From the IMG/VR virus record IMGVR_UViG_3300027708_000012, positions 186,001-250,000 of that record: a stretch of 64,000 nucleotides of DNA. One strand, given 5' to 3'. The translations under genes and the position numbers were made by a program. How positions within the stretch are numbered: position 1 is the stretch's first letter; every line of letters starts with the position of its first letter. Under the pieces are notes generated by a model. That model was given only the letters and a program-made list of their open reading frames with translations. It made no database searches and was not told the origin of the DNA. This document shows, in pieces, positions 10,743 through 63,295 of this stretch.

Positions 10743-11741
10743 TTACTTGATTAAAACAGCAGAAAAAACAGTTCCGGCATTTGCTTGTAAAACTTGTCCT
10801 GAACTAGAACTTGTAAAAGCTGCCAAAGATACATAATCGTTGATACCATTTAGATAAACTGGAAAAGACATTGGTACTGTTCTATTAACATTTGTATTAA
10901 CTTGATTTTCATTTAAATGAACAGAACTAGTATTTTTTAAAATTTTTACATACATTGAACCTGTTCCTAACCCAGATGCAAATGTTACAGAATAAGATAT
11001 ATTATACCAACCTGGCATGTTTGGGCGAAACTTATTATTTGAAAACCAAACGTTTACATCTGACTGTGCAGATAATGTTATAACTGTTTCACTGTTAGTT
11101 GGTATAGTTTGTACTGAAGTTAAACTAGCAGTTGTTACTGTGGTACTAACTGGCACAACTTCGGTACGAGCTAGCTCTCCAAAATCGTAATCGTTTTCTA
11201 GCGGATTATTGAATCCACTAAGAACTCCAGTGCCATTTAAATCGATAGTATAGCCTTTAGGATAATTTTGAAATCCTGTAGGATATGTAATTGTTCCTAG
11301 ATCTAAATCTAAACGATTGCTAGATAGTAGTGTTGATAAAATATTATTTGAGACAGGAAAATCTAAACCATATATCGTACTATGTGTGTCACCGCCGTAG
11401 GTATAATTTCCGTTAAGATTTAAATTACCTGAAAGTTTAGGAGTACTGTCATTTTCTAATTTTGTAACTGATGATAAATGTATATGATTACTATTACTTG
11501 TATCTACAATTATAGTGGTATCAGTTGTTATTGTTTTAAATTCTAAATTTAAATTAGATGTATTTTTTCCAGTAAGTATGGCCGCGCCATTTCCAAGATT
11601 AGTTCCATTAAGTACGGCACCTTCATCAAATAAGGTTTTGAAATTATCATTAACTTTAAGAAATGCCGTACGTAAATCATCTCCAGTACCGTCGTTTGGA
11701 TAAGTTCCTAACTTTATTTCTTTTAATGTTGGTATTGTCAT
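10743..11741 (-). CDS. Tail fibre/baseplate protein with T4 gp10-like N-terminal motif
   Basis: LGTYPNDGTGDDLRTAFLKVNDNF; PKLSGNLNLNG; C1q/TNF-like-looking C-terminus. Confidence 0.7.
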   Translation of the reverse strand: MTIPTLKEIKLGTYPNDGTGDDLRTAFLKVNDNFKTLFDEGAVLNGTNLGNGAAILTGKNTSNLNLEFKTITTDTTIIVDTSNSNHIHLSSVTKLENDSTPKLSGNLNLNGNYTYGGDTHSTIYGLDFPVSNNILSTLLSSNRLDLDLGTITYPTGFQNYPKGYTIDLNGTGVLSGFNNPLENDYDFGELARTEVVPVSTTVTTASLTSVQTIPTNSETVITLSAQSDVNVWFSNNKFRPNMPGWYNISYSVTFASGLGTGSMYVKILKNTSSVHLNENQVNTNVNRTVPMSFPVYLNGINDYVSLAAFTSSSSGQVLQANAGTVFSAVLIK

Positions 11742-11816
11742 AATCCGCTCTCTTTAGTATATTTACCCGTTTTTAAACATTGAATCTGTTGCGTAACGCT
11801 GTGTAGTTTTGTCTCA

Positions 11817-15505: not shown

Positions 15506-15506
<1 letters not shown>
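14994..15506 (-). CDS. Short fibre/adaptor protein with T4 gp10-like N-terminal motif
   Basis: VGASANDKAGDAIRTAFIKCNNNFDELY; NIWYDDQSGRLFVYY module. Confidence 0.7.
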
Positions 15507-27535
<12,029 letters not shown>

Positions 27536-33766: not shown

Positions 33767-34633
33767 TCAAAATAATATTTCCCTTGCCTCACTGGACGAT
33801 GCTACGTTACCACCCAATAGCTTTATAATATCTGCAGCCATTTTAACTAATTCGGCGTTAGTCTTTGCCAAAACACCTTTACTAGTATAGATATTATCTT
33901 CCATACCAACACGTACATGCCCGCCTAATATCATAGTTTGGGCTACCATTGGCATTTCTTGTTTACCTATACCAAATGCGCTCCATACACTTCCTTTTGG
34001 TAGTTCATTGTAAGCATACATCAGTGCATTAGGAGTTGCATTCCATCCATATTTGATACCCATAGCAAATTGCCAAAATGGAGTTCCTTTGATTGTTCCG
34101 TCTGCCACAAATTCCTGTGCTATACGAAAATCTCCGCTATCAAAAATTTCTAATTCACACTTTGTTCCTGCCTGCTGTACAAGATCTACCATCCTCCTAG
34201 TTATTAACTTATGATTAATACGTATACCATTTTCGGCTTGATGCATAGTATTAAAATCTATGCTGCACAAGTCAGGTTTAATTAATTCAATATGCTTAAC
34301 TCTGTCAATAGCATGAAGCAATACCGTCCCCGGTGCTCCGTGTGATAAGTTATCTTTGCTTGGAATATACAATGCTCCAGGACCTGTTGTTAAATTAATC
34401 AACACATTGGTATTATGTTTTTTAATTCTATCAACAGTATCTCGGTATAAATCTACATCCATACTAGGCCGAGTTGTTTCTGGATTACGTACATGGATAT
34501 GTACAATGGCTGCTCCCGCTTCTGCAGCCTCTAATGCACTTATAGCAATCTCTTCAGGTGTTACTGGCAGATAGGGAGTTTGTTCTCTATTAGTAACAGC
34601 ACCGGTGATGGCACAAGTGATAATAGTTTTCAT
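33767..34633 (-). CDS. Beta-keto acid cleavage enzyme (BKACE/Kce, DUF849 family)
   Basis: IITCAITGA, LPVTPEEIA, AGAAIVHIHVR, ELEIFD, GGHVRVGMEDN; start moved to 34633. Confidence 0.92.
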   Translation of the reverse strand: MKTIITCAITGAVTNREQTPYLPVTPEEIAISALEAAEAGAAIVHIHVRNPETTRPSMDVDLYRDTVDRIKKHNTNVLINLTTGPGALYIPSKDNLSHGAPGTVLLHAIDRVKHIELIKPDLCSIDFNTMHQAENGIRINHKLITRRMVDLVQQAGTKCELEIFDSGDFRIAQEFVADGTIKGTPFWQFAMGIKYGWNATPNALMYAYNELPKGSVWSAFGIGKQEMPMVAQTMILGGHVRVGMEDNIYTSKGVLAKTNAELVKMAADIIKLLGGNVASSSEAREILF

Positions 34634-35379
34634 ACAGTTCTTCCACCGTCCACTAAAAATATACTGCCTGTGGCAAATCGTATGTGTGTACAACACGCTT
34701 CAATAGTACTAGCAATATCATCTGCATACCCAATACGCTTTAACGGACTGGATTCTGCCATCTTTTCGTTAACACCTGGACCTTTAACAGCACCACTAGT
34801 TGGCTCTACCATAAAACCGGGAGACACCGCTACAATACGAATTTCAGGAGCAAGTGCTTTTGCCAAAGTTTTAGTCAGTTGATTGATTCCAGCTTTGCTA
34901 CAACCGTATGCTATATTGCTATTACTTGCACCTTCAGCACTGGTACTGGAAATATTAACTATTAATCCATCTTTGGTTTCTTTAAGCATAGGAGCAAATG
35001 CACGTATTGTAGCAAATACTCCACGCAGGTTAGTTGTTACAATACTATCAAATATTTCATCTGTGAGCGCATCCAAATTTGAAGGCAACACATTTTTTGT
35101 AATGCTTGCACTGTTAACTAAAATATCACAACGACCAAACTGTTTTTTGATCATTGCAGCCGCCAATGTCAAATCAGCTGAATTGGTAATATCTGCTAAA
35201 ATTGCTGTGCCAGATAGTGCTTGCATTTTTTGCATGGCACTATCTATATCTTTTCGAACCAGTGCTACTACTGTGGCTCCTTGCTGTGACAATCGTTGGG
35301 CGGTAGCATAACCCACTTGTCCGCATCCGCCTGTTATGACAGCAACTTGACCTTGGAGATTATTCAATCGTTGGAACAT
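34630..35379 (-). CDS. Short-chain dehydrogenase/reductase
   Basis: ITGGCGQVG, LVNSA, NISS, YGCSK. Confidence 0.92.
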   Translation of the reverse strand: MFQRLNNLQGQVAVITGGCGQVGYATAQRLSQQGATVVALVRKDIDSAMQKMQALSGTAILADITNSADLTLAAAMIKKQFGRCDILVNSASITKNVLPSNLDALTDEIFDSIVTTNLRGVFATIRAFAPMLKETKDGLIVNISSTSAEGASNSNIAYGCSKAGINQLTKTLAKALAPEIRIVAVSPGFMVEPTSGAVKGPGVNEKMAESSPLKRIGYADDIASTIEACCTHIRFATGSIFLVDGGRTV

Positions 35380-35409
35380 ATTACAAGTCCGTTAAATTAA
35401 TATTTTTAT

Positions 35410-36741
35410 TCACAATGTATATATCCGCGCTTGTTCGATCAGTTTATTTTTATCAATCTTATTAACGCCAGTAAGAGGCATAGAATCTAAAATCCAAATT
35501 TTACGCGGACATTCATTGTAAGACAATGTTTTCAAAATATGTGTTTTGATTTCATCTTCTGTTGTATTATTTTTAATAGTTACAAATGCATAAGGTTTAA
35601 CACCTTTTATATCGTCCTCTAAAGGAATAACCGCCGACTCTACTATACAAGGGTGTGTTTCTAATATAGTTTCAATCTTCCTAGGATATATGTTATTGCC
35701 ACCGCTGACAAACATATCATCGGCACGTCCCACAAAATAATAAAAACCTGCGGCATCTGTTTCAAATATATCATTAGTGATAAAATATCCATCTTTTGTA
35801 AATCTAGTGTCCCCATTACTATAACTAGTCATCATAGACGGACTTTTGATTTCTAATATTCCATTGTCTAGTCTATAATCTATTCCTGTAGCCGGATACC
35901 CTACACTCATTTCAGGAGTGGGTAACCACGGATGTTTACTAAACAACCCAGGACCTGCTTCTGTACTACCATATGCTATTGATATGGATATACTAGGAAA
36001 TTTTTGTTTAATAAAACTATATAAAGTTTTGCTAACTGGAGCACTAGCCATGGCAATATGTCTAATGGTCGTAAGTTTAGAAACGTCTTCTTGTAATAAC
36101 AAAGCAATCATAGTAGGAACTGAAGTTATAAAATTGACCTTGTGTTGTTTAATAACTTCTACAGCAGATTTAGCTTCAAATTGACTCATTAGTATTATTG
36201 TAGCATTGCCAGCTAGTCCTACTTCTAGATTAGATAACCCATTCATGTGATAGCAAGGAGCTGCTATTAGCATACGTTTTTTAGGCATTAATGGATCCTT
36301 AGCTTTTTGACTTATAGTCCATAGACGTTTATGAGGTATTACTACGCCCTTTGGCATTTTTGTAGAGCCAGATGTGTAAAGTATAATAGCAGGAGAATTT
36401 TCATCCATGCTAATTTTATCTGGGGTACCTATTTTAAAAAAATTAAAAAAGTTGTCTTCTGTTAGTACGAGTTCACATTGACTATCTTTTATAATGTACT
36501 CACGAACTGTTTGAGGTAGTTTAGTGCTGATTAAAACTGCAGTTGCACCTGCCCGTAGTATACCTAAATAGGCCGCCACAAAATTAATAGAATTATTTGC
36601 TAGTATTCCAACACGTTTATACCCAGAAAGTCCTACAGTAAAGCCGTTGGCTAAGTTGTCGAGCTCAGTATAGCTATACTCTCTATCGGTTATTATTGCT
36701 GTTTTTTCTGACGGTTTAAAAAGATAACCTAAATTATACAT
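35410..36741 (-). CDS. Acyl-CoA synthetase / AMP-binding ligase
   Basis: LYTSGSTKMPKG, AYGSTE, FITND, GRADDMFVSGGNNIYP, GVNKIDK. Confidence 0.92.
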   Translation of the reverse strand: MYNLGYLFKPSEKTAIITDREYSYTELDNLANGFTVGLSGYKRVGILANNSINFVAAYLGILRAGATAVLISTKLPQTVREYIIKDSQCELVLTEDNFFNFFKIGTPDKISMDENSPAIILYTSGSTKMPKGVVIPHKRLWTISQKAKDPLMPKKRMLIAAPCYHMNGLSNLEVGLAGNATIILMSQFEAKSAVEVIKQHKVNFITSVPTMIALLLQEDVSKLTTIRHIAMASAPVSKTLYSFIKQKFPSISISIAYGSTEAGPGLFSKHPWLPTPEMSVGYPATGIDYRLDNGILEIKSPSMMTSYSNGDTRFTKDGYFITNDIFETDAAGFYYFVGRADDMFVSGGNNIYPRKIETILETHPCIVESAVIPLEDDIKGVKPYAFVTIKNNTTEDEIKTHILKTLSYNECPRKIWILDSMPLTGVNKIDKNKLIEQARIYTL

Positions 36742-36789: not shown

Positions 36790-36839
36790 TAATTTTTTTA
36801 AGAAATATGCAACCCTATAAATATGTCACAAGGAAAATT

Positions 36840-37883
36840 ATGGACTTTACACCTGGAAAACCAATTAGAACTTATGCAGAAAATGGTGCATGGCGTGATT
36901 GGAGTACTGATGAATTGGTTGGGGACAAGCTAAACTTCTTACCAAATTGGAAATGTGGCGCAGGCGTTGACAGTCTATATGTTGATATGGATGGATACGT
37001 TTGGACAGCCAGTTGTCGTGTAGGCGGCAAATTAGGAAATGTATTTGAAGACTTTCGTGTGCCCGATGATTGGATTGATTGCAAACGTAATGTTTGTAGT
37101 TGCGGCGCCGACCTCTTTATTCCAAAAGTTAATAAAATTGAATTTAAACCATTACTTCGTAGAGGTGCTGGGTTAGAAACTGAAATTGAGCTACGTGATG
37201 ATACCCTAACTGATTTTGTTGCTATGGAAAGAACTCATGCAAGTAATCAAAAACAAGTTTATTGGGAAATAGGTCGTCGTTGCAATTATGATTGTAGTTA
37301 TTGCTGGCCGTGGATACACAATAATACCGATCCGCACAAATCGCTAGAAGAACTAATGAAAGCTACAGCACTGATAGAAGAGAAATTCACCAAAGGTGAA
37401 GCAGCTAACTTTATCATTAGCGGCGGCGAGCCAACGGTTAATAAAGATTTCTTAGACTGGTTGCGTTATCTAAACGCCATGGGACATCATGTTAGTTTGC
37501 ATAGTAACGGAAGTCGTTTACCGGACTACTACAGAGAAATCATACACTATGGTGATTTAAATTTAAGTGTACATTTTGAATTTTATGATCGTGCAAAGTT
37601 CGTTCGTGTAGTAGAAGCTATTGCAGACGAAAAAGCCAATAACGGTGGGTTAGGTCATCTGGAAATAAAATTCATGATGGCACCACATAATAGAGAAGAA
37701 ACATTAAGTTTAGAAGAAGAACTCAAAACTCTTCCGAATTTTATAGACTTTTGTACTTGGGCAGTAGTACCTATCCGTGGCGGCTTAGATAATAAAAATA
37801 GTAAGCCAAATTCAACTAGCGGAAGCGAAGTTATGGAGGGTTACACAAAGGAAGACTATATTTTGTTTGGAGACAGAAAGTGA
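36840..37883 (+). CDS. Radical SAM protein with N-terminal SPASM/twitch-like Cys domain
   Basis: CNYDCSYC, ISGGEPT, HSNGSR; N-terminal WKCGAG...C...C...CSC; start moved to MDFTP after TATAAATA (36816-36823) and the RBS. Confidence 0.85.
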   Translation: MDFTPGKPIRTYAENGAWRDWSTDELVGDKLNFLPNWKCGAGVDSLYVDMDGYVWTASCRVGGKLGNVFEDFRVPDDWIDCKRNVCSCGADLFIPKVNKIEFKPLLRRGAGLETEIELRDDTLTDFVAMERTHASNQKQVYWEIGRRCNYDCSYCWPWIHNNTDPHKSLEELMKATALIEEKFTKGEAANFIISGGEPTVNKDFLDWLRYLNAMGHHVSLHSNGSRLPDYYREIIHYGDLNLSVHFEFYDRAKFVRVVEAIADEKANNGGLGHLEIKFMMAPHNREETLSLEEELKTLPNFIDFCTWAVVPIRGGLDNKNSKPNSTSGSEVMEGYTKEDYILFGDRK

Positions 37884-39401: not shown

Positions 39402-40112
39402 TTATCTAATATAAGTGTCATCTTTTAATGATTGTATAAAACTTTTAAGCTCTACAGCGTTAGCTACTTTATCCCATAGCTGTTCAGTTTTTCTCTTTTT
39501 TAGTTGATCATTTATTTTCCCGCGATATATTGGACGTTGTATGTATTCAAATAGTTCTGCTACTATATTTTCATAGTGTATAGTAGTGTAAGTTATATCT
39601 AGCGATTTCAACCAATTATCAAAATTCTTATTTTGTTCGTATAACCAAGCCATTTCTTCAAAGTGATGTATTTCTAAATCATCGGGTAAGTCAGATGCTG
39701 TAAATTCGTGCCACACACCTGTGGATAATGCTAGTCCGTAACTTAGTATTTGAGCTTCTATATCTTGTCTTTTTAACACTACAAATTCTATATTACATTT
39801 TTCTATTCTTTTAATAATTTCTTTATGATTAGGGATATTACTGTAAGGAAAAAATCTTACCACAAGTGATTGATTTTTGTCACCATTCTCTAATGCTAAT
39901 AGCACATTTTCAACACGTTCTTCTATAGAAATTGAGCTAGTATCATCGTAATAGTTAAGAGTGTTATCATCGTTTATTTTTACTCTAGTTTCTAAATTAT
40001 GAGTAAATGGCTCGTATAGGTTTGCCATGTTACGAGTTGAACTTTCAAGCAGTGTGGCCAGTAATTGACTACCACTACGCGGTAACCCTAAAATGCAAAA
40101 TCTCTTTTTCAT
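39402..40112 (-). CDS. Sulfotransferase-like protein (Stf0/P-loop type)
   Basis: ILGLPRSGSQLL 5'-PSB loop, LYEPF, LKRQDIEAQILS, IHYE. Confidence 0.7.
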   Translation of the reverse strand: MKKRFCILGLPRSGSQLLATLLESSTRNMANLYEPFTHNLETRVKINDDNTLNYYDDTSSISIEERVENVLLALENGDKNQSLVVRFFPYSNIPNHKEIIKRIEKCNIEFVVLKRQDIEAQILSYGLALSTGVWHEFTASDLPDDLEIHHFEEMAWLYEQNKNFDNWLKSLDITYTTIHYENIVAELFEYIQRPIYRGKINDQLKKRKTEQLWDKVANAVELKSFIQSLKDDTYIR

Positions 40113-41059
40113 TACTTTTCCTTAGTACTCATAATATCAAAATTACAATGACACATATTTTTGCTACACACTATTGGCTCAGTTGGGAGAGTTAAATCTA
40201 CGTCGTTTATTTTACCAACAGCACCACCCTCTTTACACCATCCTCGATAAATTGAACCATCCATATCAACAATCAATTGCTCAATACCAGCATAGCATTT
40301 CCAGCCAGACCAGTCATTGATTTTTTCGCTAATGAACCTATGCGCACTTGATACTTGGCTAGTACCGTCAGGATATACTACACGCATAGCACCTCTGTAA
40401 TAATCAAATGTCTTGGTAAATTTAATATGTTTACTGATTAATTCGTGTTGCTTATCAAATATTCTCTTTTGAAAATCATTATAATCATAGAGTGTATCAC
40501 CAAAGTCGTGGATCAATGGCTGCAAGGCCATACTAATATTGCCTAAATTTTTAATTTTATTTGCTACAGCATAACAATGATCAAACTTTTCAGGACTCAT
40601 CATTATGTTAACGTGAGTGCGTACATCGTTGTTTAATAATTTAACTACGTCAATAAAGTGTTTATCGTCAGCATGCTCTGGATGAAAGCTAAGACATACA
40701 TGATCAAAGTATTGTTTATTTTCTTCCCAGTATCTTAGTGTGCGTGATCCATTACTGATTAAACCAACTTTGACACCCATCTCAGAACAAAATTGACAAA
40801 TTTCAATAAAATGTTTATACATTGTGACTTCACCACCAGTGAATTCAAAATATATTTTTTTATGAAAATATTGATCTTTTACACGAGCAATGAAATTTTT
40901 AATTACGCTAGGATCAGGCCAATACTTTGATCCATCGTGCAGTGCTGAAGGACAATACGAGCAACTATAGTTACAGGTATTGCCCAAGCACCAATTGACT
41001 ACAAACCAATCTTCGTGCGAATTGTTTGAATGTTCTAACCGTATATATTTGTGTTCCAT
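40112..41059 (-). CDS. Radical SAM protein with C-terminal SPASM/twitch-like domain
   Basis: CNYSCSYC, FTGGEVT, ISNGSR; C-terminal WKCYAG...C...C...CHC. Confidence 0.88.
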   Translation of the reverse strand: MEHKYIRLEHSNNSHEDWFVVNWCLGNTCNYSCSYCPSALHDGSKYWPDPSVIKNFIARVKDQYFHKKIYFEFTGGEVTMYKHFIEICQFCSEMGVKVGLISNGSRTLRYWEENKQYFDHVCLSFHPEHADDKHFIDVVKLLNNDVRTHVNIMMSPEKFDHCYAVANKIKNLGNISMALQPLIHDFGDTLYDYNDFQKRIFDKQHELISKHIKFTKTFDYYRGAMRVVYPDGTSQVSSAHRFISEKINDWSGWKCYAGIEQLIVDMDGSIYRGWCKEGGAVGKINDVDLTLPTEPIVCSKNMCHCNFDIMSTKEK

Positions 41060-55448: not shown

Positions 55449-56003
55449 TTATTCATCGTCACTCCAAGGAACTGGTCTCCAACCCAATCGATTTAAATCC
55501 AATTCAATTTCTTCAGTAACATGCCCTTCTGGTACATAGGTTCTGCCATCTGGATCTGTTTCAGGCATAACTGCGGTTAGTCCGTATCCTTTATCCCGGG
55601 TACCAATGCCGCTACAGTACCAATCAATATAGTCACCCTTTTCTTGCATATCGGCAATTATACCTCCGGCATGGCGCCAACTGCAACTCCAAACTTCGCC
55701 TTTCATTTCTTGCCAAAACTCTCTGCTTTGCCAAGTCATGTTGCACATTGCGGCATACAAGTTTTGAGCATAGATGTCCGACTGTTTAACTTTATCGCAA
55801 AGTTCTTTTGAACTGCGTAAGTCGTATTCCATATTGTTCTTTTGCCAAGCAGGATCTACGATTGCTTTGTCATCTTGTTCTTGCCAACTTTCGTACATGG
55901 CAATTAATTTAGAATCGGGCTCTTTGCCTTCATCTTGACACCGTTCAATATACCCGTCTCGTTGAAAAGTATGACGATCAGGGCTCTTATTTACTTTTAC
56001 CAT
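55449..56003 (-). CDS. Hypothetical phage protein
   Basis: Likely start MVKVNKS at 56003; YAQNLYAAMCN, SWRHAGGIIAD. Confidence 0.75.
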   Translation of the reverse strand: MVKVNKSPDRHTFQRDGYIERCQDEGKEPDSKLIAMYESWQEQDDKAIVDPAWQKNNMEYDLRSSKELCDKVKQSDIYAQNLYAAMCNMTWQSREFWQEMKGEVWSCSWRHAGGIIADMQEKGDYIDWYCSGIGTRDKGYGLTAVMPETDPDGRTYVPEGHVTEEIELDLNRLGWRPVPWSDDE

Positions 56004-56322
56004 TATGGAAATTACCTTGGATGCAATGGCGGACTTCGTGTCCAATTGTATGAAAATTTGCTGTAGGTCCTGTGATGATTGTACACTGAGTGCCTTCGTT
56101 ATTCCAAAAGCTGCAAGCATCGACACCAAATCCAAAGCCTTGTCCAGTTAATCGTTTGCTTTCTGCATCGCAAGCAGCCTGAACATTATTTACAGGTCTG
56201 AATGTAATAGTCGTTCGATTAGTCATGTTACGAGTCATAAGAAACTCTTCGTGCGGATCTTCTTGATAAGCAAACGAGTTAGCGGTTACTAACAAACTTA
56301 CAATTACTAATGCCTTTTTCAT
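55987..56322 (-). CDS. Exported small HExxH protein
   Basis: Signal peptide MKKALVIVSLLVTANSFA; GHEVRHC. Confidence 0.7.
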   Translation of the reverse strand: MKKALVIVSLLVTANSFAYQEDPHEEFLMTRNMTNRTTITFRPVNNVQAACDAESKRLTGQGFGFGVDACSFWNNEGTQCTIITGPTANFHTIGHEVRHCIQGNFHNGKSK

Positions 56323-56508: not shown

Positions 56509-56871
56509 CTAGTCTGCTGATCTAGTTAGATAGTAATCACGTATTTTGGTACATCCAAAAGAAGATTTGATACTTTCTTTAACAATGTTGGTATCGAATT
56601 TCTTACAAGAAAATACATCTAAATAAATTTGTCCTAGATCATCAACAAAATGAGCAACAATACTAGAAGTAACAATAATTTGTACAACGGTGAAGCCAGC
56701 TTTATCTGGAAATTCGGATGCGGTGTATTCAATTACAGGGTTGCCAACTGGCGACATATCTATATCTTTTACTAACTTTTTAATCCATCTTTCAACATTA
56801 TCTCGATTTGACATCAACAACTGATTACCGCCTCCACAATCGAGTATTGATTGATAACCCCAGTAATCCAT
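56509..56871 (-). CDS. speD: Pyruvoyl-dependent S-adenosylmethionine decarboxylase-like proenzyme
   Basis: AGFTVVQIIVTSSIVAHF, YLDVFSCK. Confidence 0.75.
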   Translation of the reverse strand: MDYWGYQSILDCGGGNQLLMSNRDNVERWIKKLVKDIDMSPVGNPVIEYTASEFPDKAGFTVVQIIVTSSIVAHFVDDLGQIYLDVFSCKKFDTNIVKESIKSSFGCTKIRDYYLTRSAD

Positions 56872-56924: not shown

Positions 56925-56926
56925 CA

Positions 56927-56950
56927 AAAAAGGCTCCGGAGAGCCTTTTT
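56927..56950 (-). terminator. Intrinsic terminator after dctP
   Basis: AAAAAGGCTC-CGGA-GAGCCTTTTT. Confidence 0.85.
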
Positions 56951-56962
56951 AAATTTAATCAA

Positions 56963-57907
56963 TTATTTTGATTGAATCTTAGCTACTAAGCCAGCAGTAA
57001 AATAGTTCTCAAATTTCTCGTAAACTACTTTAGTTGCTTCTGCAAAGCGAACTTGCTCTTCTGTGCTCATACGAACAACTTCAATACCGTCAGCTTCTGC
57101 ACGAGCTTGTACAAGTGCGATGTCGTCGATACTTAGGCTACGCTCATAACGTGCGGCTTCTTTAGCGGCTTCGCTAACAACTGCCTGTAGTTCTGAACTT
57201 AGTGTGTTCCAGAAGTCAGTACCAATCAAAATGCTTGTTAAGAACAAGCTGTGTTCTGTGTGGTTGATAACTTTAGATACTTTGTCGTGTCCTAGTGCAT
57301 AAACACGAGGATATGTGCTTTCGCCAACTGTTACATTAGCTGAAGCCAAGTTCTCTGATAGTTCTTCCAATTCCATTGGAACTACATCAGCACCAAGGGT
57401 TTTGAATGTTTCGATAGCAACTGGGCTGAAACTTGTGCGCAACTTCATACCACGTAGGTCTTCAATCTTAGCTACTGCTTCATTACCAGGAATGATACGG
57501 AAACCGCCTGAGTATGTGAAAGCTAAACCTTTAACTTTCTTAGACTCTTGCAAGCTATCTAACAAACTAGCGCCGACTTCACCTTCGAATACGCGACTTG
57601 CGTGATCGTGGTCTTTAAACAAGAACGGTAGATCCAAAGCATAAAAGTCTTTGTTGATCTTACCTAGTGTAATTGTGTAAGTTTGACTCATTTCGATTGC
57701 GCCAGAATCTAGCAAATCTACTAAGCTGTGCTTGTCAACTACAACACCGTTATTGTACTTTTCAGCGTATTCGCTCATAGTCATAACTTCGATTTCAAGT
57801 TGTTCAGGTGCTCGTGCATTTACTTCTTGAGCAAATACTTTGGCGGCGCGAATAAACAACTCAATTGGCTCGTGTGCGAGTACCCATTTTATGTGTTTTT
57901 TGTTCAT
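56963..57907 (-). CDS. dctP: TRAP-type solute-binding protein (DctP family) without signal peptide
   Basis: ALDLPFLF, KIEDLRGMKLRT, FKTLGADVVPM, HTEHSL; N-terminus MNKKHIKWVLAHEP has no hydrophobic core. Confidence 0.85.
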   Translation of the reverse strand: MNKKHIKWVLAHEPIELFIRAAKVFAQEVNARAPEQLEIEVMTMSEYAEKYNNGVVVDKHSLVDLLDSGAIEMSQTYTITLGKINKDFYALDLPFLFKDHDHASRVFEGEVGASLLDSLQESKKVKGLAFTYSGGFRIIPGNEAVAKIEDLRGMKLRTSFSPVAIETFKTLGADVVPMELEELSENLASANVTVGESTYPRVYALGHDKVSKVINHTEHSLFLTSILIGTDFWNTLSSELQAVVSEAAKEAARYERSLSIDDIALVQARAEADGIEVVRMSTEEQVRFAEATKVVYEKFENYFTAGLVAKIQSK

Positions 57908-57933
57908 TTCAAATCTCCAATGGACTAATATAC

Positions 57934-58194
57934 TTATTTAGTTGTTTTGGATTTTTCTGAGTTATCTGCTACTTTTTTACCCCAATCCGCTACGTTCCAA
58001 GCACGTTCGTGAAAGAAATAAAGTATGCTGTTAACTACTAAGGCAAAGCTAACAACTCCTAGCCCTACCATCCAGCTACCGCTTGCTAACCATCCACCAA
58101 CAAAGTTTGTAATAGTTACTAGAATACGCCAAGTAATAACCTTAGCCAGTGAGCGCGGAATACGCTCTTGAAATTTAGTTTTTAAGTTTAACAT
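57934..58194 (-). CDS. DUF2061-like small membrane protein
   Basis: RSLAKVITWR ... LYFFHERAWN. Confidence 0.8.
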   Translation of the reverse strand: MLNLKTKFQERIPRSLAKVITWRILVTITNFVGGWLASGSWMVGLGVVSFALVVNSILYFFHERAWNVADWGKKVADNSEKSKTTK

Positions 58195-58202
58195 ATTTTT
58201 TT

Positions 58203-59450
58203 TTAATGTGGCCAGTCTATTTTATAGTTAACTATGTGATGTTTAAAGTATTCGTATACACCTGGATCGTCAACGCTTATCTTTTTATAGTCATTGATCA
58301 TACCTAAATTTGTAAGACCTTCTGGGGTTTTCTTACCGTTAATTGTTAAATTCCCTAAAGATTCAAGTTTAGTTTTGAAATAAAAATACCAATTGTTCTT
58401 ATCATAGTTACATATGTAATTCCTAGCTGTGTACTTATATGTTGCAATGGTATTGTGTATTTTTTCTCCGTTGTTATTATTGACCATACTCCATAACTGA
58501 TAATCGATTCCGTTAAACCAATTAATAGTAGAATCTATGCATTGTCGTACAGACACCACTGTATTAAAATATAATGCACCCCTCACCGAACAATTTAAAT
58601 ATTTTACATTAAAAATCAACCACCAAAAGAAATCGTGCAAGCTATGCACAGGAACCGATGATGTGTTTATATTATGCACATATTTTTGATATAATAATCT
58701 ACCGTGCTCCAGACCTTCGGGCGTTGTATTGTATGCAAAATGCCTAATAAGAAGATCTTTATAAGCACTGTAATGCACATCACCGGACGATATTTTATAT
58801 TTTAAAGGCCGTAAGTTTGCTTGTACTTCAGGACTAAGATGTCTAGTATATTCGTCATAGTTATTGTACATCTCTAATCCGATACTAGTTCCCATAATAC
58901 AATCGCCTTCGTCTGAAGTAATTGGCATGTAGCCCATGTTGATTATATCGTCGTACCAATAGTTCAATGAATCGAGTATTTTAAATTTACCGTGGATATA
59001 ATTTTCCCATATGTACGGGTTTTCAATTACGGCGTGCATACTCGAAGAAATAATCACCGATTTTAATTCTTCTTGATTTAAATTTTTAAGAAGAGAAACA
59101 AGAACAAGTGTGCTATCTATGCCGCCTGAATATAATAATGCAAATTTTTTCCCTTGTTGAATTAAGGCTTTAATTTCCAAAGCGCGACTATCTGTTACTT
59201 CCTCAAACGATTTATTAAAATTTGGATCGTAAGCAGGCATTGCAAAATCTGGAATGATTTCTTGCTTCCACGGAAGGCTCCACTCCCCTTCGTTGCGTGT
59301 AACAAATCGACTTAATGAAAATCTTTTTGCAATATCTAAATAAAATTTACCGCCGGGCCCAGATTCTTCTCTGATGCTGTTCCAAAAATCCCAAGGTGCA
59401 TATCTGTCACCTCGAATATTATGGAAATAAAGTGTGTCGTCTAAGTTCAT
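58203..59450 (-). CDS. PP-loop (asparagine-synthetase-like) ATP pyrophosphatase 1
   Basis: ALLYSGGIDSTLVL; ITSDEGDCIMG; no N-terminal Cys glutaminase domain. Confidence 0.7.
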   Translation of the reverse strand: MNLDDTLYFHNIRGDRYAPWDFWNSIREESGPGGKFYLDIAKRFSLSRFVTRNEGEWSLPWKQEIIPDFAMPAYDPNFNKSFEEVTDSRALEIKALIQQGKKFALLYSGGIDSTLVLVSLLKNLNQEELKSVIISSSMHAVIENPYIWENYIHGKFKILDSLNYWYDDIINMGYMPITSDEGDCIMGTSIGLEMYNNYDEYTRHLSPEVQANLRPLKYKISSGDVHYSAYKDLLIRHFAYNTTPEGLEHGRLLYQKYVHNINTSSVPVHSLHDFFWWLIFNVKYLNCSVRGALYFNTVVSVRQCIDSTINWFNGIDYQLWSMVNNNNGEKIHNTIATYKYTARNYICNYDKNNWYFYFKTKLESLGNLTINGKKTPEGLTNLGMINDYKKISVDDPGVYEYFKHHIVNYKIDWPH

Positions 59451-60202
59451 CGTTTTTTAATTAAAGGTATTAATATTTTTGCGGAGCTGTCAAACTCCCA
59501 CCATTTTTCTCCAAAGTCTGCATTTCCAGCATTGTGATGATGATTGTTATGCCAACCTTGCCCCCATACAAATAGACCAGTAAACCAATTATTAACTGAA
59601 TTGTCATCTGTGTTATGATTTCGGTATCCCGCTGATGGAATATGGCCTACTACATTGACTAAATTATCTTGATGATGACTTAACAAAATTGCTGGAATTA
59701 AAACCCCTAGAGTAAATTGCCAAGAAACAATTGCAGAAATTAAAATGGTACTCCAAAATATTTTATTATGATTTTCATGTAGGTAAACAAGATAGGGGTC
59801 TTTCATAATATCTCTTGCTGACATTAAATTTACCTTTGCCGGATTAATTTTACGTTGCCATGTTATAAATGCACTTAGTTTTCCGTGTATGGGACTGTGC
59901 ATATCTTGCTCTTTGTCTGCATACCTATGATGTATTCCTCGATGTAAAGCTACCCAGAACGGTAAACTTCCATCGGCACTCATCATACCTAAGTAAGCTA
60001 ACACTTTAGCAATAATAGGATATGTCTCAAAACTTTTATGAGCAAAGTATCTATGGTATCCAACAGCAACACCAAACCCGCCAATTAATGTCCACATGAA
60101 TAAAATGCCAATCAGATTCCACCAAGTATAGTTTATAAAAAACAACGAGGCTAGAAAAATAACGTGTAAGGGATAACTTACTTTATATAAATGTTTATTC
60201 AT
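59447..60202 (-). CDS. Membrane fatty-acid desaturase (delta-9-like)
   Basis: His boxes HRYFAH, HRGIHH, HNNHH; DNSVN, GQGWHNNHH. Confidence 0.92.
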   Translation of the reverse strand: MNKHLYKVSYPLHVIFLASLFFINYTWWNLIGILFMWTLIGGFGVAVGYHRYFAHKSFETYPIIAKVLAYLGMMSADGSLPFWVALHRGIHHRYADKEQDMHSPIHGKLSAFITWQRKINPAKVNLMSARDIMKDPYLVYLHENHNKIFWSTILISAIVSWQFTLGVLIPAILLSHHQDNLVNVVGHIPSAGYRNHNTDDNSVNNWFTGLFVWGQGWHNNHHHNAGNADFGEKWWEFDSSAKILIPLIKKR

Positions 60203-60728
60203 TTCGATAACACCATCTAACTACTTGATCAACCGGACTAATAGTATTTCCGACAAAACTGTTTATGAATGGATACGTTGTTTTTTTATTTTTTGGAATT
60301 TCATACATTGTAAAAACACTGTATCGTTGTAATTCAATAGAGTGTTGCCTAGTGTTAGCCGATTTAGTAAAACTAGAAGGTTGGACATATACAAAGTTGA
60401 AGAGTTCTTCTGATTCCCAATATTTAATAGCAGCATTATATAATTCTGCAATACCATTAGTAGCTGCATTGAACATTGGATTACCATGCTTGCAAACTAC
60501 CAGTATCATGTACCATGCTGGTACAGTGTGTAATTTTTTAGTTGCCATGAATGAAATTAGTTTTTTATTTTCAAAACAACCAAAAATTACAACATTAGGT
60601 CCTATGATACGGGTAACTTCTTCAATTGATAAACGAGTCCGTAATACTCTCCTGGCAAATTTTTTATGTTCTGCACATAGATGATATATTTCGGAATAAT
60701 CATCCGGTTCGCAAATTCTTATGTGCAT
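60195..60728 (-). CDS. Hypothetical protein, possible GNAT fold
   Basis: MHIRICEPDDY start and FGCFENKKLISF strand-turn pattern. Confidence 0.5.
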   Translation of the reverse strand: MHIRICEPDDYSEIYHLCAEHKKFARRVLRTRLSIEEVTRIIGPNVVIFGCFENKKLISFMATKKLHTVPAWYMILVVCKHGNPMFNAATNGIAELYNAAIKYWESEELFNFVYVQPSSFTKSANTRQHSIELQRYSVFTMYEIPKNKKTTYPFINSFVGNTISPVDQVVRWCYRNE

Positions 60729-61291
60729 TGGTCTATCCTTTTATTTAATTCGTCCCAGCTTATGCTAGGAATGAATGTTGCAGAAATAGTTAATCGAGGT
60801 TGTGTATTTTTTGAAACATCAAGTACGTGCGGGAATTCTGTACGAATAAAAGCAGACGACATTGATAATATTTCTTGATGTAAAGGCTCGGTTGTTACAG
60901 GATATACAAATGCTCCAGAATGATCGGAAAAATCTTGATTGTCAATATCTGGTCTTTCGTACCAGGAAATAATTCCAGGTTCTCCTCCAACATAAAATGC
61001 TAGTCTCCAAATTAACGGGCCGTCAATTGTATTACCGTCAATATGATTACTAGTTACAGTTCCGGGCCTTGCAGTAAATGCATTTACTTTAGCAACTTTC
61101 AACCCCAATTTGTCTGCCAATGTAGTTAAGTCTTTTCCAAATTTACTTCTAAGTATTTTTCTTAAATTTAAATAACCGTGGTACTCTAGTTGTTTTGTAA
61201 TATCGTGTTCATGCAACATCGAAATTACCATTTCGATATCTTCTTTCGAAGGTTTAAAATTATCAAATGTCCTTACAAATTTATCTCTCAT
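60719..61291 (-). CDS. Hypothetical cupin / 2OG-Fe(II)-like protein
   Basis: SNHIDG (HxD) ... FPHVL ... RLTISA. Confidence 0.55.
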   Translation of the reverse strand: MRDKFVRTFDNFKPSKEDIEMVISMLHEHDITKQLEYHGYLNLRKILRSKFGKDLTTLADKLGLKVAKVNAFTARPGTVTSNHIDGNTIDGPLIWRLAFYVGGEPGIISWYERPDIDNQDFSDHSGAFVYPVTTEPLHQEILSMSSAFIRTEFPHVLDVSKNTQPRLTISATFIPSISWDELNKRIDQCT

Positions 61292-61298
61292 ATTAATT

Positions 61299-62009
61299 TT
61301 ATAAAATAGTCCCGCGTTTAAAACTATGAGTTTCGCCCATTAATTCGTAGTAATAATCTGCGACCCACCATGTTGTTTCATATTGCTGTTCCCACATTTT
61401 ATTAATTTTAAATTTAGCTTCTTTTAAAGTTTGACTAAAATATAGAATTTTTTTAATTTCTTGTATAATTCCGTTAGGATAAAATGAACGATCTGTATAA
61501 GAGCTAAGACCGTCCACCCATTCTTTAGGAAAAAATTCCTGAGAAATTGTGTAAGTATCGTAAAAATTTACGGTAATACTACATAATTTCCCGGCATACA
61601 TTGCTTTATGCACATAGTCGGCATACTCTTTAAGTGATGACAGCATACTGTTACTACTTTGTGCTTTAAAATCTTCCGGAGTTCCTTGGTAACTAATTTG
61701 AAGAGGATTGTCTATAATTTTTAATATAGGAGTTTGCCCATGTATTAAATCAGAAATTGTTCCTCTCTTTTGACGAGTCTTGTCAAATATCATAAACTCT
61801 AGGCAATTCGTATTATCCATTTTTCCGATATTATTAGGTAATACATATACCACCGATGCTATTTTTGATGATAACACTTTAGCAGTTTCGAGTGTTACCC
61901 AAAAGTCTTCATTATCGACAATTAACCAACGATCGAAGGAATGACAATAAATTCCGTTCTTTCTTCGATTGGAATCTTTGTCGTAGTAGTATTGCAAAGA
62001 CTGACTCAT
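61299..62009 (-). CDS. Hypothetical protein
   Basis: Likely start MSQSLQYYY. Confidence 0.7.
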   Translation of the reverse strand: MSQSLQYYYDKDSNRRKNGIYCHSFDRWLIVDNEDFWVTLETAKVLSSKIASVVYVLPNNIGKMDNTNCLEFMIFDKTRQKRGTISDLIHGQTPILKIIDNPLQISYQGTPEDFKAQSSNSMLSSLKEYADYVHKAMYAGKLCSITVNFYDTYTISQEFFPKEWVDGLSSYTDRSFYPNGIIQEIKKILYFSQTLKEAKFKINKMWEQQYETTWWVADYYYELMGETHSFKRGTIL

Positions 62010-62096
62010 TTTTAGTATCCTGTGTTGGTGGCAAATATTTAGCACCATACGGTTGCGGCTGATAAATATTGTATATTATTAATAAGGATATTAAAT

Positions 62097-62431: not shown

Positions 62432-63295
62432 ATGTTTAAAAATATACCTAAAGTATTTGCACATGTATCGTCTGTAAAAGATAGCAATTTTGTATTACCT
62501 GAATATATTTTAAACTATAGTAATGATACGGCAAATTTGTTTCACAAATATTGTCCGCACAGGATGTATCCGTTAGGTTTGACAGGGGAGCATGTTAACA
62601 ACATAACTTGCAAATTTCATAATTTTAAATGGAATAAAGACGGAACGCCTATTAATAATCCAAAAAAATTGCATTGTGGCAGTGCAGAAATAGGTCGCTC
62701 CGGATTAGTATTTAAAAATTTTAAAGAACCAAATCATCAATGGGTGGATGATTTAGCCGACGAAAAAAACTTAGTATACAGTCATTCTTGTCGCGGCGAA
62801 AGCAAAGGTAGTTGGTTATGGTTAATGGATGCCGAAGCAGATTACCTGCATATATATGGTGGGCAAGTACACCCTCGACTATCTTCTATCATTGATCTAG
62901 AAGAATCAATAATGGATCAAGGAGAAGGATGGATTTATCAAGAGCACACTCCGGGCTGGTGGTCAGTATATATCTATCCGTATACTTTTATAGAACATAC
63001 AGATGGGTGTTTATCTGTAAACTATGTGGTACCGTCTAATTCAATTGATGAGTATGGGTTTGAGTGGATCACACAATTTTATTACGACCCGACAGTATCG
63101 ACTGATCTTAGAGAAGAATTTGAAACTCTAGAAACTGTATTCAGAGAAGATGTAGCTGTTGCTGAATTGCAGAAAGGAAATTATTTTCCTTTAATGAAAG
63201 CTATGAATCGCTACGAAGATCACTGTGTTCATTTTGGTCAGTGGTTTCGGAACCACCGATTGCCGCCATCAATCGAGATTCAGAAAGTAGAATAG
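62432..63295 (+). CDS. Rieske 2Fe-2S oxygenase-like protein
   Basis: CPHR ... CKFH Rieske motif; EADYLHIYGGQVH; FREDVAVAE. Confidence 0.85.
   Translation: MFKNIPKVFAHVSSVKDSNFVLPEYILNYSNDTANLFHKYCPHRMYPLGLTGEHVNNITCKFHNFKWNKDGTPINNPKKLHCGSAEIGRSGLVFKNFKEPNHQWVDDLADEKNLVYSHSCRGESKGSWLWLMDAEADYLHIYGGQVHPRLSSIIDLEESIMDQGEGWIYQEHTPGWWSVYIYPYTFIEHTDGCLSVNYVVPSNSIDEYGFEWITQFYYDPTVSTDLREEFETLETVFREDVAVAELQKGNYFPLMKAMNRYEDHCVHFGQWFRNHRLPPSIEIQKVE

What the first reader, a model, noticed from the sequence alone, without database searches (positions are those of the whole stretch)
56963..58194. DctP solute-binding protein with no signal peptide and no transporter partners
Seen: a full DctP-like sequence starting MNKKHIKWVLAHEP with no hydrophobic export signal. 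It has its own late-type TAAATA motif (57935-57940) and terminator. No DctQ/DctM gene is in the window; the only nearby membrane gene is the 86-aa DUF2061-like protein. Established: DctP proteins are periplasmic carboxylate binders that work with DctQM. Inference: repurposed as a cytoplasmic or virion-associated ligand sponge or sensor, for example for a product of the adjacent cluster or a host defence signal.
Basis: partly seen in the sequence, partly recalled or inferred. Interest (0 to 1): 0.65.

Follow-up and report, generated by a model that had tools for sequence, protein, structure and literature searches.

The report
Cytoplasmic DctP-type binding protein in phage
A large T4-like phage carries an intact, strongly conserved copy of a bacterial "periplasmic" organic-acid-binding protein that has lost its export signal and has no transporter partner; it belongs to a big, apparently undescribed clade of such proteins in phages and predatory bacteria, which most likely bind a carboxylic acid inside the cell.

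Summary
Window 56963-57907 (-) encodes a 314-aa DctP/TRAP solute-binding protein (Pfam 7e-51). The AF2 model has pLDDT 95.6 and TM 0.88 to solved TRAP binders. Only 10 codons are open upstream, so there is no room for a signal peptide. The whole 345-kb T4-like phage record has no DctQ, DctM, TctC or MFS gene.

Two details are wrong. The "late-type TAAATA" is a common 6-mer that overlaps the DUF2061 stop codon. DUF2061 is not the only membrane gene nearby.

The gene is the last of a seven-gene operon, which ends in a strong terminator.

It is not a one-off. All 68 copies in 59 related viral contigs lack a signal peptide. dN/dS is 0.05-0.23 with saturated dS.

A tree places them in one large signal-less clade, nested among exported relatives from Bdellovibrionota. 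Bona fide Bdellovibrionota genomes carry signal-less copies too. In some they sit in operons with an oxalate/formate-family MFS transporter. In one they sit between cytoplasmic enzymes that act on carboxylic acids.

In phages the commonest neighbour is an AsnB-type carboxylate-adenylating enzyme.

Best reading: a cytoplasmic carboxylate binder that captures a substrate or hands it over. It is not a TRAP transporter subunit. The ligand and the partner are unknown.

The parts
56963..57907 (-). Signal-peptide-less DctP-family (TRAP-type) solute-binding protein, 314 aa
   Evidence: PF03480 at 7.2e-51. AF2 pLDDT 95.6. Foldseek hit 4p47, TM 0.88, E 4e-29. Only 10 codons are open upstream.
57915..57918 (-). 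Shine-Dalgarno GGAG, 7 nt before the ATG
   Evidence: Read directly from the sequence.
56926..56950 (-). Intrinsic terminator that closes the operon: hairpin AAAAAGGCUC-UCCG-GAGCCUUUUU followed by a U tract
   Evidence: Fold of -15 kcal/mol, z -3.97, 0 of 200 shuffles as good. Sequence.
57934..58194 (-). DUF2061 membrane protein, 86 aa, a two-helix hairpin; a recurrent neighbour of this DctP
   Evidence: PF09834 at 2.5e-14. Hydrophobic residues 35-62. Present in 9 of 34 non-identical phage loci, always within 2 genes of dctP, and adjacent in 6 against 1.2 expected.
58203..59450 (-). AsnB-type PP-loop synthetase domain (carboxylate adenylation and amide formation) without a glutaminase domain, 415 aa
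   Evidence: SGGIDS motif. Weak LarE hit. AF2 pLDDT 86.6. VIA-align: TsnB9 Z 14.0, asparagine synthetase Z 11.9, beta-lactam synthetase Z 11.2, carbapenam synthetase Z 10.8.
59447..60202 (-). Membrane fatty-acid-desaturase-like di-iron protein, 251 aa
   Evidence: PF00487 at 1.8e-11. Weak DesA-family hit. Two hydrophobic segments.
60195..62048 (-). Three upstream operon genes of unknown family (177, 190 and 249 aa), overlapping or nearly abutting
   Evidence: ORFs. No Pfam or NCBIfam match. Homologues of the 249-aa protein recur beside dctP in L003-L005, L007, L068 and L089.

Best explanation
The gene encodes a folded, functional DctP-type binding protein that stays in the cytoplasm of the infected cell and binds a small carboxylic acid. 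It is not a subunit of a TRAP transporter.

It belongs to a clade that lost the export signal once and has been kept under strong purifying selection in T4-like aquatic phages and in Bdellovibrionota.

Its most likely job is to capture an organic acid inside the cell, either made there or brought in by a carboxylate transporter of another kind. It would hold the acid as a sink or hand it to cytoplasmic enzymes that activate carboxyl groups. In this window the candidate enzyme is the AsnB-type synthetase two genes upstream in the same operon.

Shown: family, fold, lack of a signal peptide, lack of transporter partners, conservation, phylogeny and gene neighbourhoods.

Inferred: cytoplasmic location, carboxylate binding, and the capture or hand-over role.
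For: (1) Intact binder
- The HMM match spans almost the whole family profile.
- The AF2 model has pLDDT 95.6 and superposes on solved TRAP binders over about 312 columns, TM 0.80-0.88.
- The arginine of the TRAP selectivity filter aligns with R157, in the motif KLRT, in the HMMER alignments to 4p47, 4n8y and 4xfe.
- By constant offset, R137, R157 and S197 correspond to SiaP R127, R147 and N187. This step is my inference.

(2) No export
- All 68 copies in 59 viral loci start no more than 7 residues before the conserved first strand W-V-L-A-H-E-P.
- Signal peptides are present on other binding proteins of the same phages and on a neighbouring ORF in the window.

(3) Selection
- dN/dS is 0.05-0.23, with dS at or above 0.9 even for the 92%-identical copy.
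- The conservation therefore reflects constraint, not recent transfer.

(4) Phylogeny
- The tree has 203 sequences. The basal branches all carry signal peptides.
- One clade of 103 leaves (support 96) is signal-less. It is sister to exported Bacteriovorax proteins.
- The trait changes state only 8 times, against about 67 in shuffles.

(5) The subfamily works without TRAP membrane parts
- The exported Bdellovibrionota relatives are orphans.
- 3 of 5 such genomes have no DctM at all, and in one where DctM is present it lies on a different contig from the DctP gene.

(6) Cytoplasmic partners in real cells
- Bdellovibrionota loci L071 and L074 carry the operon OFA-family MFS carboxylate transporter, then a ~200-aa HxD..H protein, then signal-less DctP. 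TIGR04259 scores 348.6 bits against a cut-off of 335. L070 and L072 show the ~200-aa gene and DctP, preceded by an ORF cut by the contig end.
- L089 has BKACE, DctP, acyl-CoA ligase, SDR, an unknown gene and an AsnB-like gene in one direction with short gaps.

(7) Phage neighbourhoods
- A PP-loop AsnB-like gene is present in 23 of 34 non-identical loci. It is adjacent in 9, against 4.3 expected, and within 2 genes in 16.
- All solved structural relatives of the window's copy adenylate a carboxyl group.
- The window's phage also has BKACE, SDR and an acyl-CoA ligase, at 33767-36741.
Against: - No ligand, location or partner has been measured.
- Gene neighbourhoods vary a great deal. In several T4-like relatives the gene sits in the tail and head module, with no enzyme beside it. 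This argues that it can act alone or on a host component.
- The adjacency counts are modest and the loci are related, so they are not independent.
- R157 is not universal in the subfamily: 81 of 113 signal-less members and 43 of 90 exported members have it. Some members may therefore bind something other than a carboxylate.
- I could not get model coordinates, so placing the invariant residues in the cleft rests on homology.
- Structure prediction of a DctP-DUF2061 complex gave no answer.
- Expression data could not be obtained.
Confidence: 0.5

Rival explanations
1. The binding-protein fold has become an enzyme. The clade catalyses a reaction on a carboxylic acid in the cytoplasm, as has happened to other periplasmic-binding-protein folds.
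For: The subfamily has its own invariant polar set (H12, S133, E196, R201, H219, T224). This set is kept in both exported and signal-less members, and it is kept more strictly than the canonical Arg157. The protein is extremely conserved, as metabolic enzymes are. It sits inside enzyme operons.
Against: The same signature is present in the exported, periplasmic relatives, where a binding role is expected. All structural neighbours are binders. No catalytic motif is known for this fold family.
Confidence: 0.15
2. It acts at the inner face of the membrane. It docks on DUF2061 or on a carboxylate transporter of the host or the phage (MFS, TctA, DctQM) and gates it or pulls substrate from it.
For: DUF2061 is always within 2 genes of dctP where it is present, and adjacent in 6 of 9 loci against 1.2 expected. 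Both DUF2061 tails are charged and probably cytoplasmic (read from the sequence). Bdellovibrionota operons pair the signal-less DctP with an MFS carboxylate transporter. Some phages place it beside DctQM or TctA.
Against: DUF2061 is present in only 9 of 34 non-identical loci. The window's phage has no MFS, TctA/C or DctQM gene. The complex prediction gave no support either way. No TRAP binder is known to dock from the cytoplasmic side (my own knowledge).
Confidence: 0.15
3. It is a sponge that sequesters a host signalling or defence molecule, or a regulatory metabolite such as 2-oxoglutarate, to manipulate the infected cell.
For: It is an orphan, cytoplasmic, high-affinity-type binder that is very widespread in phages and sits in varied genomic contexts. 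Those are features of a self-sufficient function.
Against: Orthologues in free-living Bdellovibrionota sit in metabolic or transport operons, which a counter-defence protein would not be expected to do. No defence-related neighbour was seen. Nothing links the fold to known signal sponges.
Confidence: 0.1
4. It still works in the periplasm with a host TRAP transporter, and reaches it by an unconventional route (hitch-hiking on an exported partner, or a leaky envelope late in infection).
For: It keeps the full binder architecture and the filter arginine. The cyanophage PstS precedent shows that a phage binding protein can use a host transporter (my own knowledge).
Against: The signal peptide is absent across the whole 103-leaf clade and has been for a long time. 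The same phages use normal signal peptides for other binding proteins. Even the exported relatives are not linked to DctQM.
Confidence: 0.05

Closest known systems
Canonical TRAP-transporter solute-binding proteins (DctP family; for example PDB 4p47 Oant_4429, 4n8y, 4xfe, SiaP 2cex)
   Same: Same Pfam family and the same two-lobe fold along its whole length (TM 0.80-0.88, 20-28% identity). The conserved arginine is at the equivalent position.
   Different: This protein has no signal peptide and no dctQ or dctM in the genome. It has its own N-terminal signature (W-V-L-A-H-E-P) and its own invariant set (H12, S133, E196, R201, H219). No solved structure aligns with its first ~50 residues in the best sequence matches.
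Signal-less DctP orthologues of Bdellovibrionota found here (L070, L071, L074, L089)
   Same: They belong to the same signal-less clade at 47-55% identity and share the same signature.
   Different: They are cellular. In L071 and L074 they sit in an operon with an oxalate/formate-family MFS transporter and a ~200-aa HxD..H protein; L070 shows the same arrangement, cut at the contig end. In L089 they sit in a BKACE / ligase / SDR / AsnB-like operon. The window's phage has the enzymes but no transporter.
Phage-encoded periplasmic binding proteins used as auxiliary metabolic genes (cyanophage PstS; my own knowledge)
   Same: A phage carries one soluble binding component of a bacterial uptake system without its membrane parts.
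   Different: PstS keeps its signal peptide and is thought to feed the host's PstCAB in the periplasm. This protein cannot be exported.
Cytoplasmic or catalytic descendants of periplasmic-binding-protein folds (LysR-type effector domains, cyclohexadienyl dehydratase; my own knowledge)
   Same: A binding-protein fold is re-used away from transport.
   Different: Those derive from other binding-protein classes. I found no description of a cytoplasmic DctP-family member in the searchable literature.

Membership tests
DctP family (Pfam PF03480, TRAP-type solute-binding proteins) | Sequence match to the family model over its full length | tested here: met
   E 7.2e-51 and 173.6 bits against a cut-off of 23.4, over profile positions 13-284 of 286. 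NCBIfam TRAP_S1 137.7 bits against 50. The narrower TIGR00787 scores 141.9, below its cut-off of 175.
DctP family (Pfam PF03480, TRAP-type solute-binding proteins) | Two-lobe binding-protein fold with the long C-terminal spanning helix | tested here: met
   AF2 pLDDT 95.6, with a helix at residues 238-272. The top 49 Foldseek hits are all TRAP binders, TM up to 0.88.
DctP family (Pfam PF03480, TRAP-type solute-binding proteins) | Conserved arginine that binds the ligand's carboxylate (SiaP R147) | tested here: met
   R157 aligns with the K-I/L-R-T/V arginine of 4p47, 4n8y and 4xfe. It is present in 81 of 113 signal-less clade members. Ligand binding itself was not measured.
TRAP transporter system (functional tripartite unit) | N-terminal signal peptide or lipobox that places the binder outside the membrane | tested here: not met
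   Only 10 non-hydrophobic codons are open upstream. None of the 68 viral copies has a signal peptide.
TRAP transporter system (functional tripartite unit) | DctQ and DctM membrane subunits encoded with the binder | tested here: not met
   No PF04290 or PF06808 match at E <= 1 in the 345-kb record, which is 94% complete. A host copy cannot be excluded, but it would be out of reach for a cytoplasmic protein.
Phage auxiliary binding proteins of the PstS type | Exported binder that can serve a host membrane transporter | tested here: not met
   There is no export signal. Other binders in related phages do have one.
Phage sponges for defence signals | Binds a nucleotide-derived immune signal and protects the phage from a signalling defence system | not testable with these tools
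   No assay is available here. No sequence or fold link was seen. Cellular orthologues sit in metabolic operons.
T4-type late gene | TATAAATA late promoter shortly upstream of the gene | tested here: not met
   Only cTAAATAa is present, overlapping the preceding stop codon. The full octamer is used elsewhere in the genome: 13 of its 18 copies lie within 60 nt upstream of an ORF.

The most novel reading that the evidence does not exclude
The signal-less 'WVLAHEP' clade is a new functional class: a TRAP-type binding protein that works in the cytoplasm. It would either be the substrate-capturing subunit of an undescribed carboxylate-amidation pathway (with the AsnB-type PP-loop enzymes that recur beside it), or be an enzyme itself. 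Such a class would be shared between T4-like aquatic phages and predatory Bdellovibrionota. It would be used together with phage-borne porins and TTT or TRAP uptake genes to rewire organic-acid use in the infected cell.
Probability: 0.25. Interest if true: 0.8.

Novelty: new variant of a known kind. Interest (0 to 1): 0.62.

Why it matters
TRAP binding proteins are textbook extracytoplasmic components. A large, ancient and strongly selected clade that works inside the cell would add a new role to the family, in the way cytoplasmic descendants of other binding-protein folds became regulators or enzymes.

The clade is abundant. The word search gave 2,529 relatives, and the 120 best were all 85-96% identical. 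The large representative search gave 175 clusters below 1e-30. Yet it is absent from all 50,697 deposited phage genomes except as bacterial contamination. It therefore marks a function of uncultured freshwater T4-like phages that current annotation mislabels as a "periplasmic transport component".

Related phages also carry porins, TctA/TctC, and complete DctQM sets with exported binders. This points to organic-acid acquisition and processing as a theme of phage metabolic reprogramming. The protein is small, soluble and easy to express, so the question can be tested directly.

Tried and rejected
- Megablast of the region against deposited phages found nothing. The tblastn hits there were bacterial DctP genes in contaminated or short records, at 21-33% identity.
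- The DNA ligase and a structural-region protein did not place the phage near any isolate.
- The complex prediction for DctP and DUF2061 returned 'no answer' (score 0.00). It counts neither for nor against binding.
No expression or transcript-boundary data were obtained, and read laying was not used.
- Literature searches found no description of a phage DctP or a cytoplasmic DctP. I searched for phage with DctP, for phage-encoded TRAP binders, for TRAP-type AMGs, for signal-less TRAP binders, for DUF2061, and for TctC in freshwater phages. Many 'dctp' hits were the nucleotide dCTP.
- The scanner did not list the operon terminator. Folding the stretch showed it.
- A DUF2061-DctP fusion by frameshift is rejected, because stops close both frames.
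- An upstream alternative start is rejected. The 319-329-aa database versions only add the translated, non-hydrophobic intergenic spacer.
- No family was found for the ~200-aa HxD..H protein, for the 177-, 190-, 248- and 249-aa window proteins, or for the ~394-aa PP-loop cluster, beyond the PP-loop motif.
Full report
WHAT IS THERE

The window is bases 186001-250000 of a 345,369-bp IMG/VR virus record that CheckV rates 94% complete. The record encodes a T4-type major capsid protein (PF07068, 1.7e-80), so this is a large T4-like phage. No deposited phage is close to it.

The ORF at 56963..57907 on the minus strand gives a 314-aa protein. It matches Pfam DctP (PF03480) at 7.2e-51 over almost the whole profile. 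It also passes NCBIfam's TRAP_S1 model.

An AlphaFold2 model built on 27 homologues has mean pLDDT 95.6. Foldseek aligns it along its whole length with solved TRAP binding proteins. The best hit is 4p47 at TM 0.88, and every one of the top 49 entries is a TRAP binder. The protein is intact, not a remnant.

NO SIGNAL PEPTIDE, NO PARTNERS

- The reading frame is open for only ten codons upstream of the ATG, and a GGAG sits seven bases before it.
- The conserved first beta-strand of the fold begins at residue 6-8. Nothing in the protein is hydrophobic enough to be a signal or an anchor.
- The DUF2061 gene ends 26 nt upstream, in another frame. TAA codons close both frames, so a fusion by frameshift is excluded.
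- The whole record has no DctQ, DctM, TctC or MFS gene.
- The phage does use signal peptides elsewhere. The 111-aa ORF at 55987-56322, 640 bases downstream of dctP, starts with a textbook one.

The 'late-type TAAATA' hexamer exists at 57940-57935, but it reads cTAAATAa and overlaps the DUF2061 stop codon. TAAATA occurs 309 times in the genome and upstream of 80 of 379 ORFs.

The full T4 late octamer TATAAATA appears to be used in this genome: 13 of its 18 copies lie within 60 nt upstream of an ORF. It is not present here.

The genes from 62048 down to 56963 overlap or are separated by 26 nt at most. A strong hairpin and U tract follow the dctP stop codon (z -3.97). A sigma-70-like promoter for the next gene comes right after that. 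I therefore read dctP as the last gene of a seven-gene operon:
- three proteins of unknown family (249, 190 and 177 aa);
- a membrane desaturase-like protein;
- a 415-aa PP-loop protein;
- DUF2061;
- DctP.

The desaturase-like protein has two hydrophobic segments, so DUF2061 is not the only membrane protein nearby.

IT IS A FAMILY, NOT AN ACCIDENT

- The word-based search found 2,529 relatives. The 120 best were 85-96% identical and 314-329 aa long, all from metagenomes.
- The longer versions only add the translated spacer.
- IMG/VR holds 59 loci with a relative, at 100% down to 39% identity, some with two or three paralogues.
- In all 68 copies the protein begins no more than seven residues before the W-V-L-A-H-E-P strand.
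- Against the window's copy, dN/dS is 0.05-0.23. dS is about 0.9 or more even for the 92%-identical protein. The high identity therefore reflects constraint, not recent exchange.
- Neighbouring proteins in the same loci are only 25-55% identical.

ORIGIN

The exhaustive search of 1.84 billion cluster representatives gave 8,385 hits, 175 of them below 1e-30. The nearest share a signature with the window's protein: W8, H12, P14, T131, S133, G134, G135, E196, T198, R201, H219 and T224. They come in two forms, with a classical signal peptide or without one.

I built a tree of 203 sequences with FastTree and rooted it on Bacillaceae lipoprotein DctPs.
- All basal branches carry signal peptides.
- A single clade of 103 leaves (support 96) is signal-less. 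The two apparent exceptions in it are over-extended ORFs.
- Its sister group is exported Bacteriovorax proteins.
- The trait changes only 8 times, against about 67 in shuffles.
- A second, small signal-less group has hydrophilic N-terminal extensions.

In the species-genome collection, the cellular relatives are mostly Bdellovibrionota: Bacteriovorax, Bacteriovoracaceae, Pseudobdellovibrionaceae and Bdellovibrio. That scan used only two peptide patterns, so it is not exhaustive.

THE SUBFAMILY DOES NOT LOOK LIKE A TRAP SUBUNIT EVEN WHEN EXPORTED

The exported relative in a Pseudobdellovibrionaceae MAG has no dctQM beside it. Three of five Bdellovibrionota genomes that carry the subfamily have no DctM at all. 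Where I checked a genome that has DctM (G001), it lies on a different contig. These are MAGs, so absence is not proof.

CONTEXT IN REAL CELLS

Signal-less copies occur in loci that are clearly cellular:
- L070 has flagellin and RNase J;
- L074 has a ketoacyl synthase;
- L089 has GroES and GroEL;
- L068 has a ClpX-like ATPase on a 504-kb contig.

In L071 and L074 the arrangement is an MFS transporter, then a ~200-aa protein with an HxD..H motif, then DctP. In L070 and L072 the ORF upstream of the ~200-aa gene is cut by the contig end, so it could not be checked; it may be the same transporter. The MFS protein of L071 scores above NCBIfam's cut-off for the oxalate/formate antiporter family (348.6 against 335). 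It also resembles lactate transporters.

In L089 the order is BKACE, DctP, acyl-CoA ligase, SDR, an unknown gene and an AsnB-like gene, all in one direction with gaps of 82 nt or less.

So the cellular orthologues are tied to carboxylate transport of a non-TRAP kind, and to cytoplasmic enzymes that act on carboxylic acids.

CONTEXT IN PHAGES

Neighbourhoods vary.
- In one group of T4-like phages the gene sits between the head-closure gene and the terminase, next to the tail sheath and tube genes.
- In others, as in the window, it sits among biosynthetic genes.

I reduced the phage loci to 34 with non-identical DctP. The commonest neighbour is then a PP-loop protein of 340-435 aa carrying the SGGxDS motif. 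It falls into two sequence clusters that are related at the motif (hhalign probability 95%). It is present in 23 loci, adjacent in 9 against 4.3 expected, and within two genes in 16.

DUF2061 is present in 9 loci, always within two genes, and adjacent in 6 against 1.2 expected. The loci are related, so these counts are suggestive only.

I folded the window's PP-loop protein (pLDDT 86.6). An exhaustive structural comparison puts it with the synthetase domains of the asparagine-synthetase class, above the generic PP-loop enzymes at Z 7-8:

| Structural match | Z | Aligned residues |
|---|---|---|
| TsnB9 | 14.0 | 260 |
| Human asparagine synthetase | 11.9 | 194 |
| Beta-lactam synthetase | 11.2 | 189 |
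| Carbapenam synthetase | 10.8 | 193 |

It lacks the glutaminase domain. By established knowledge of that enzyme class, all of these enzymes adenylate a carboxyl group.

The window also holds BKACE (PF05853, 2.5e-92), an SDR and an acyl-CoA ligase at 33767-36741. This is the same set that flanks dctP in L007, L015, L068 and L089.

BINDING SITE

HMMER alignments to 4p47, 4n8y and 4xfe place R157 (motif KLRT) on the arginine that binds the ligand's carboxylate in TRAP binders. They place E196-S197 on the E-N of the conserved (Q)EN motif.

The spacing R137 / R157 / S197 equals that of SiaP R127 / R147 / N187. I take this as correspondence, but it is my inference.

The family-invariant residues fall in the loops that form the cleft in known structures. 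I could not check this on coordinates. R157 is kept in 81 of 113 signal-less members and 43 of 90 exported members, so the subfamily's own invariant set may matter more than this arginine.

EXPLANATION

The best-supported reading is a cytoplasmic carboxylate-binding protein. It would capture an organic acid and act as a sink, or hand the acid to carboxyl-activating enzymes. It is not a TRAP transporter subunit.

My confidence splits as follows:
- about 0.8 that it is a functional cytoplasmic ligand binder;
- about 0.5 for the statement as a whole;
- less for the specific hand-over to the AsnB-type enzyme.

Rivals:
- an enzyme derived from the binder fold (0.15);
- a factor at the inner face of the membrane, working with DUF2061 or a transporter (0.15);
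- a sponge for a signal or a regulatory metabolite (0.1);
- unconventional export to serve a host TRAP system (0.05).

The complex prediction with DUF2061 gave no answer.

NOVELTY

I found no paper that describes a phage DctP or a cytoplasmic DctP-family protein in the searchable library. No solved structure belongs to this subfamily.

It is a member of a known protein family used in a new way, so I rate it a new variant of a known kind. The clade is large, old and strongly selected, and it is shared between phages and predatory bacteria. That makes it more interesting than a single odd gene.

LIMITS

- The host is unknown.
- The MAG-based absences are soft.
- The tree was made with FastTree only.
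- The adjacency statistics are not corrected for relatedness.

Noticed in passing
L032:3213-8933 (also L033, L036-L038, L052): Related T4-like phages encode a complete TRAP set: DctQ (PF04290, 6e-21), DctM (PF06808, 4e-60) and a 388-aa DctP of another subfamily with a clear signal peptide (MKRFIGAVLATAMSFGMFASVATVNA). Two signal-less DctP paralogues flank this set. It appears to be a whole phage-borne TRAP transporter.
   Followed up: partly
L049:2759-3733 and 9034-9942; L064:6368-7276, 9281-10186 and 11414-12295; L119:4796-6961: Phages of this group also carry TctC/Bug-like binding proteins with signal peptides. One has a TctA membrane subunit (L119) and one a Gram-negative porin (PF13609, 5e-28, L064), all next to the signal-less DctP. 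Uptake of organic acids looks like a theme.
   Followed up: partly
window 33767-36741: This is a cluster of a beta-keto-acid cleavage enzyme (PF05853, 2.5e-92), a short-chain dehydrogenase and an AMP-forming acyl-CoA ligase. The BKACE is 66-84% identical in related phages. The trio sits right beside dctP in L007, L015, L068 and L089.
   Followed up: partly
L070:556-1161, L071:7369-7986, L074:7385-7999, L050:11427-12080, L007:10596-11261: This is a ~200-aa protein family with no Pfam, NCBIfam or PHROG match. It has a conserved L-P-x-L-P-P-P start and an H-T-D ... H-S motif, like Fe(II) oxygenases or cupins. It lies directly upstream of the signal-less DctP in Bdellovibrionota and in some phages.
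   Followed up: partly
window 15506-27535: A single 4,009-aa ORF on the minus strand lies among structural-looking genes. It was not examined.
   Followed up: no
window 56509-56871: An S-adenosylmethionine decarboxylase-like gene (PF02675, 6e-13) lies directly after the dctP terminator. It has its own sigma-70-like promoter, TTGACT-17-TACAAT, at 56924-56896.
   Followed up: no
window 36807-37883 (+) and 40112-41059 (-): Two radical-SAM proteins (PHROG hits). With the Rieske protein at 62432-63295 and the desaturase-like gene, they suggest that this part of the genome encodes an elaborate small-molecule pathway.
   Followed up: no
whole genome G000: The T4 late-promoter octamer TATAAATA occurs 18 times, 13 of them within 60 nt upstream of an ORF, in a genome that is 95% coding. 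T4-type late transcription is probably in use.
   Followed up: partly
L008-L014, L016, L022, L048, L051 (for example L008:8026-8707): IscU-like and IscA/HesB-like iron-sulfur assembly genes, recognised by eye, lie just downstream of dctP and a PP-loop gene in one phage subgroup.
   Followed up: no
P0157, P0166, P0171, P0174, P0177, P0184, P0190, L084: This is a second, independent signal-less group of the same DctP subfamily, with hydrophilic N-terminal extensions of 16-30 residues. One member is from a Polyangiaceae MAG.
   Followed up: no
L075, L081, L082 (one 'Polynucleobacter' MAG); L067, L073, L088: These short contigs carry phage-like genes and signal-less DctP, but are binned into freshwater Burkholderiales, Methylococcaceae and Gammaproteobacteria MAGs. 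They are probably mis-binned phage fragments. The true host is open. The phage GC content of 38% and the genes shared with Bacteriovoracaceae are a lead.
   Followed up: no
window 55449-56135 and 55987-56322: Two minus-strand ORFs overlap by about 150 nt. The 111-aa one has a clear signal peptide. One of the two starts may be mis-set.
   Followed up: no
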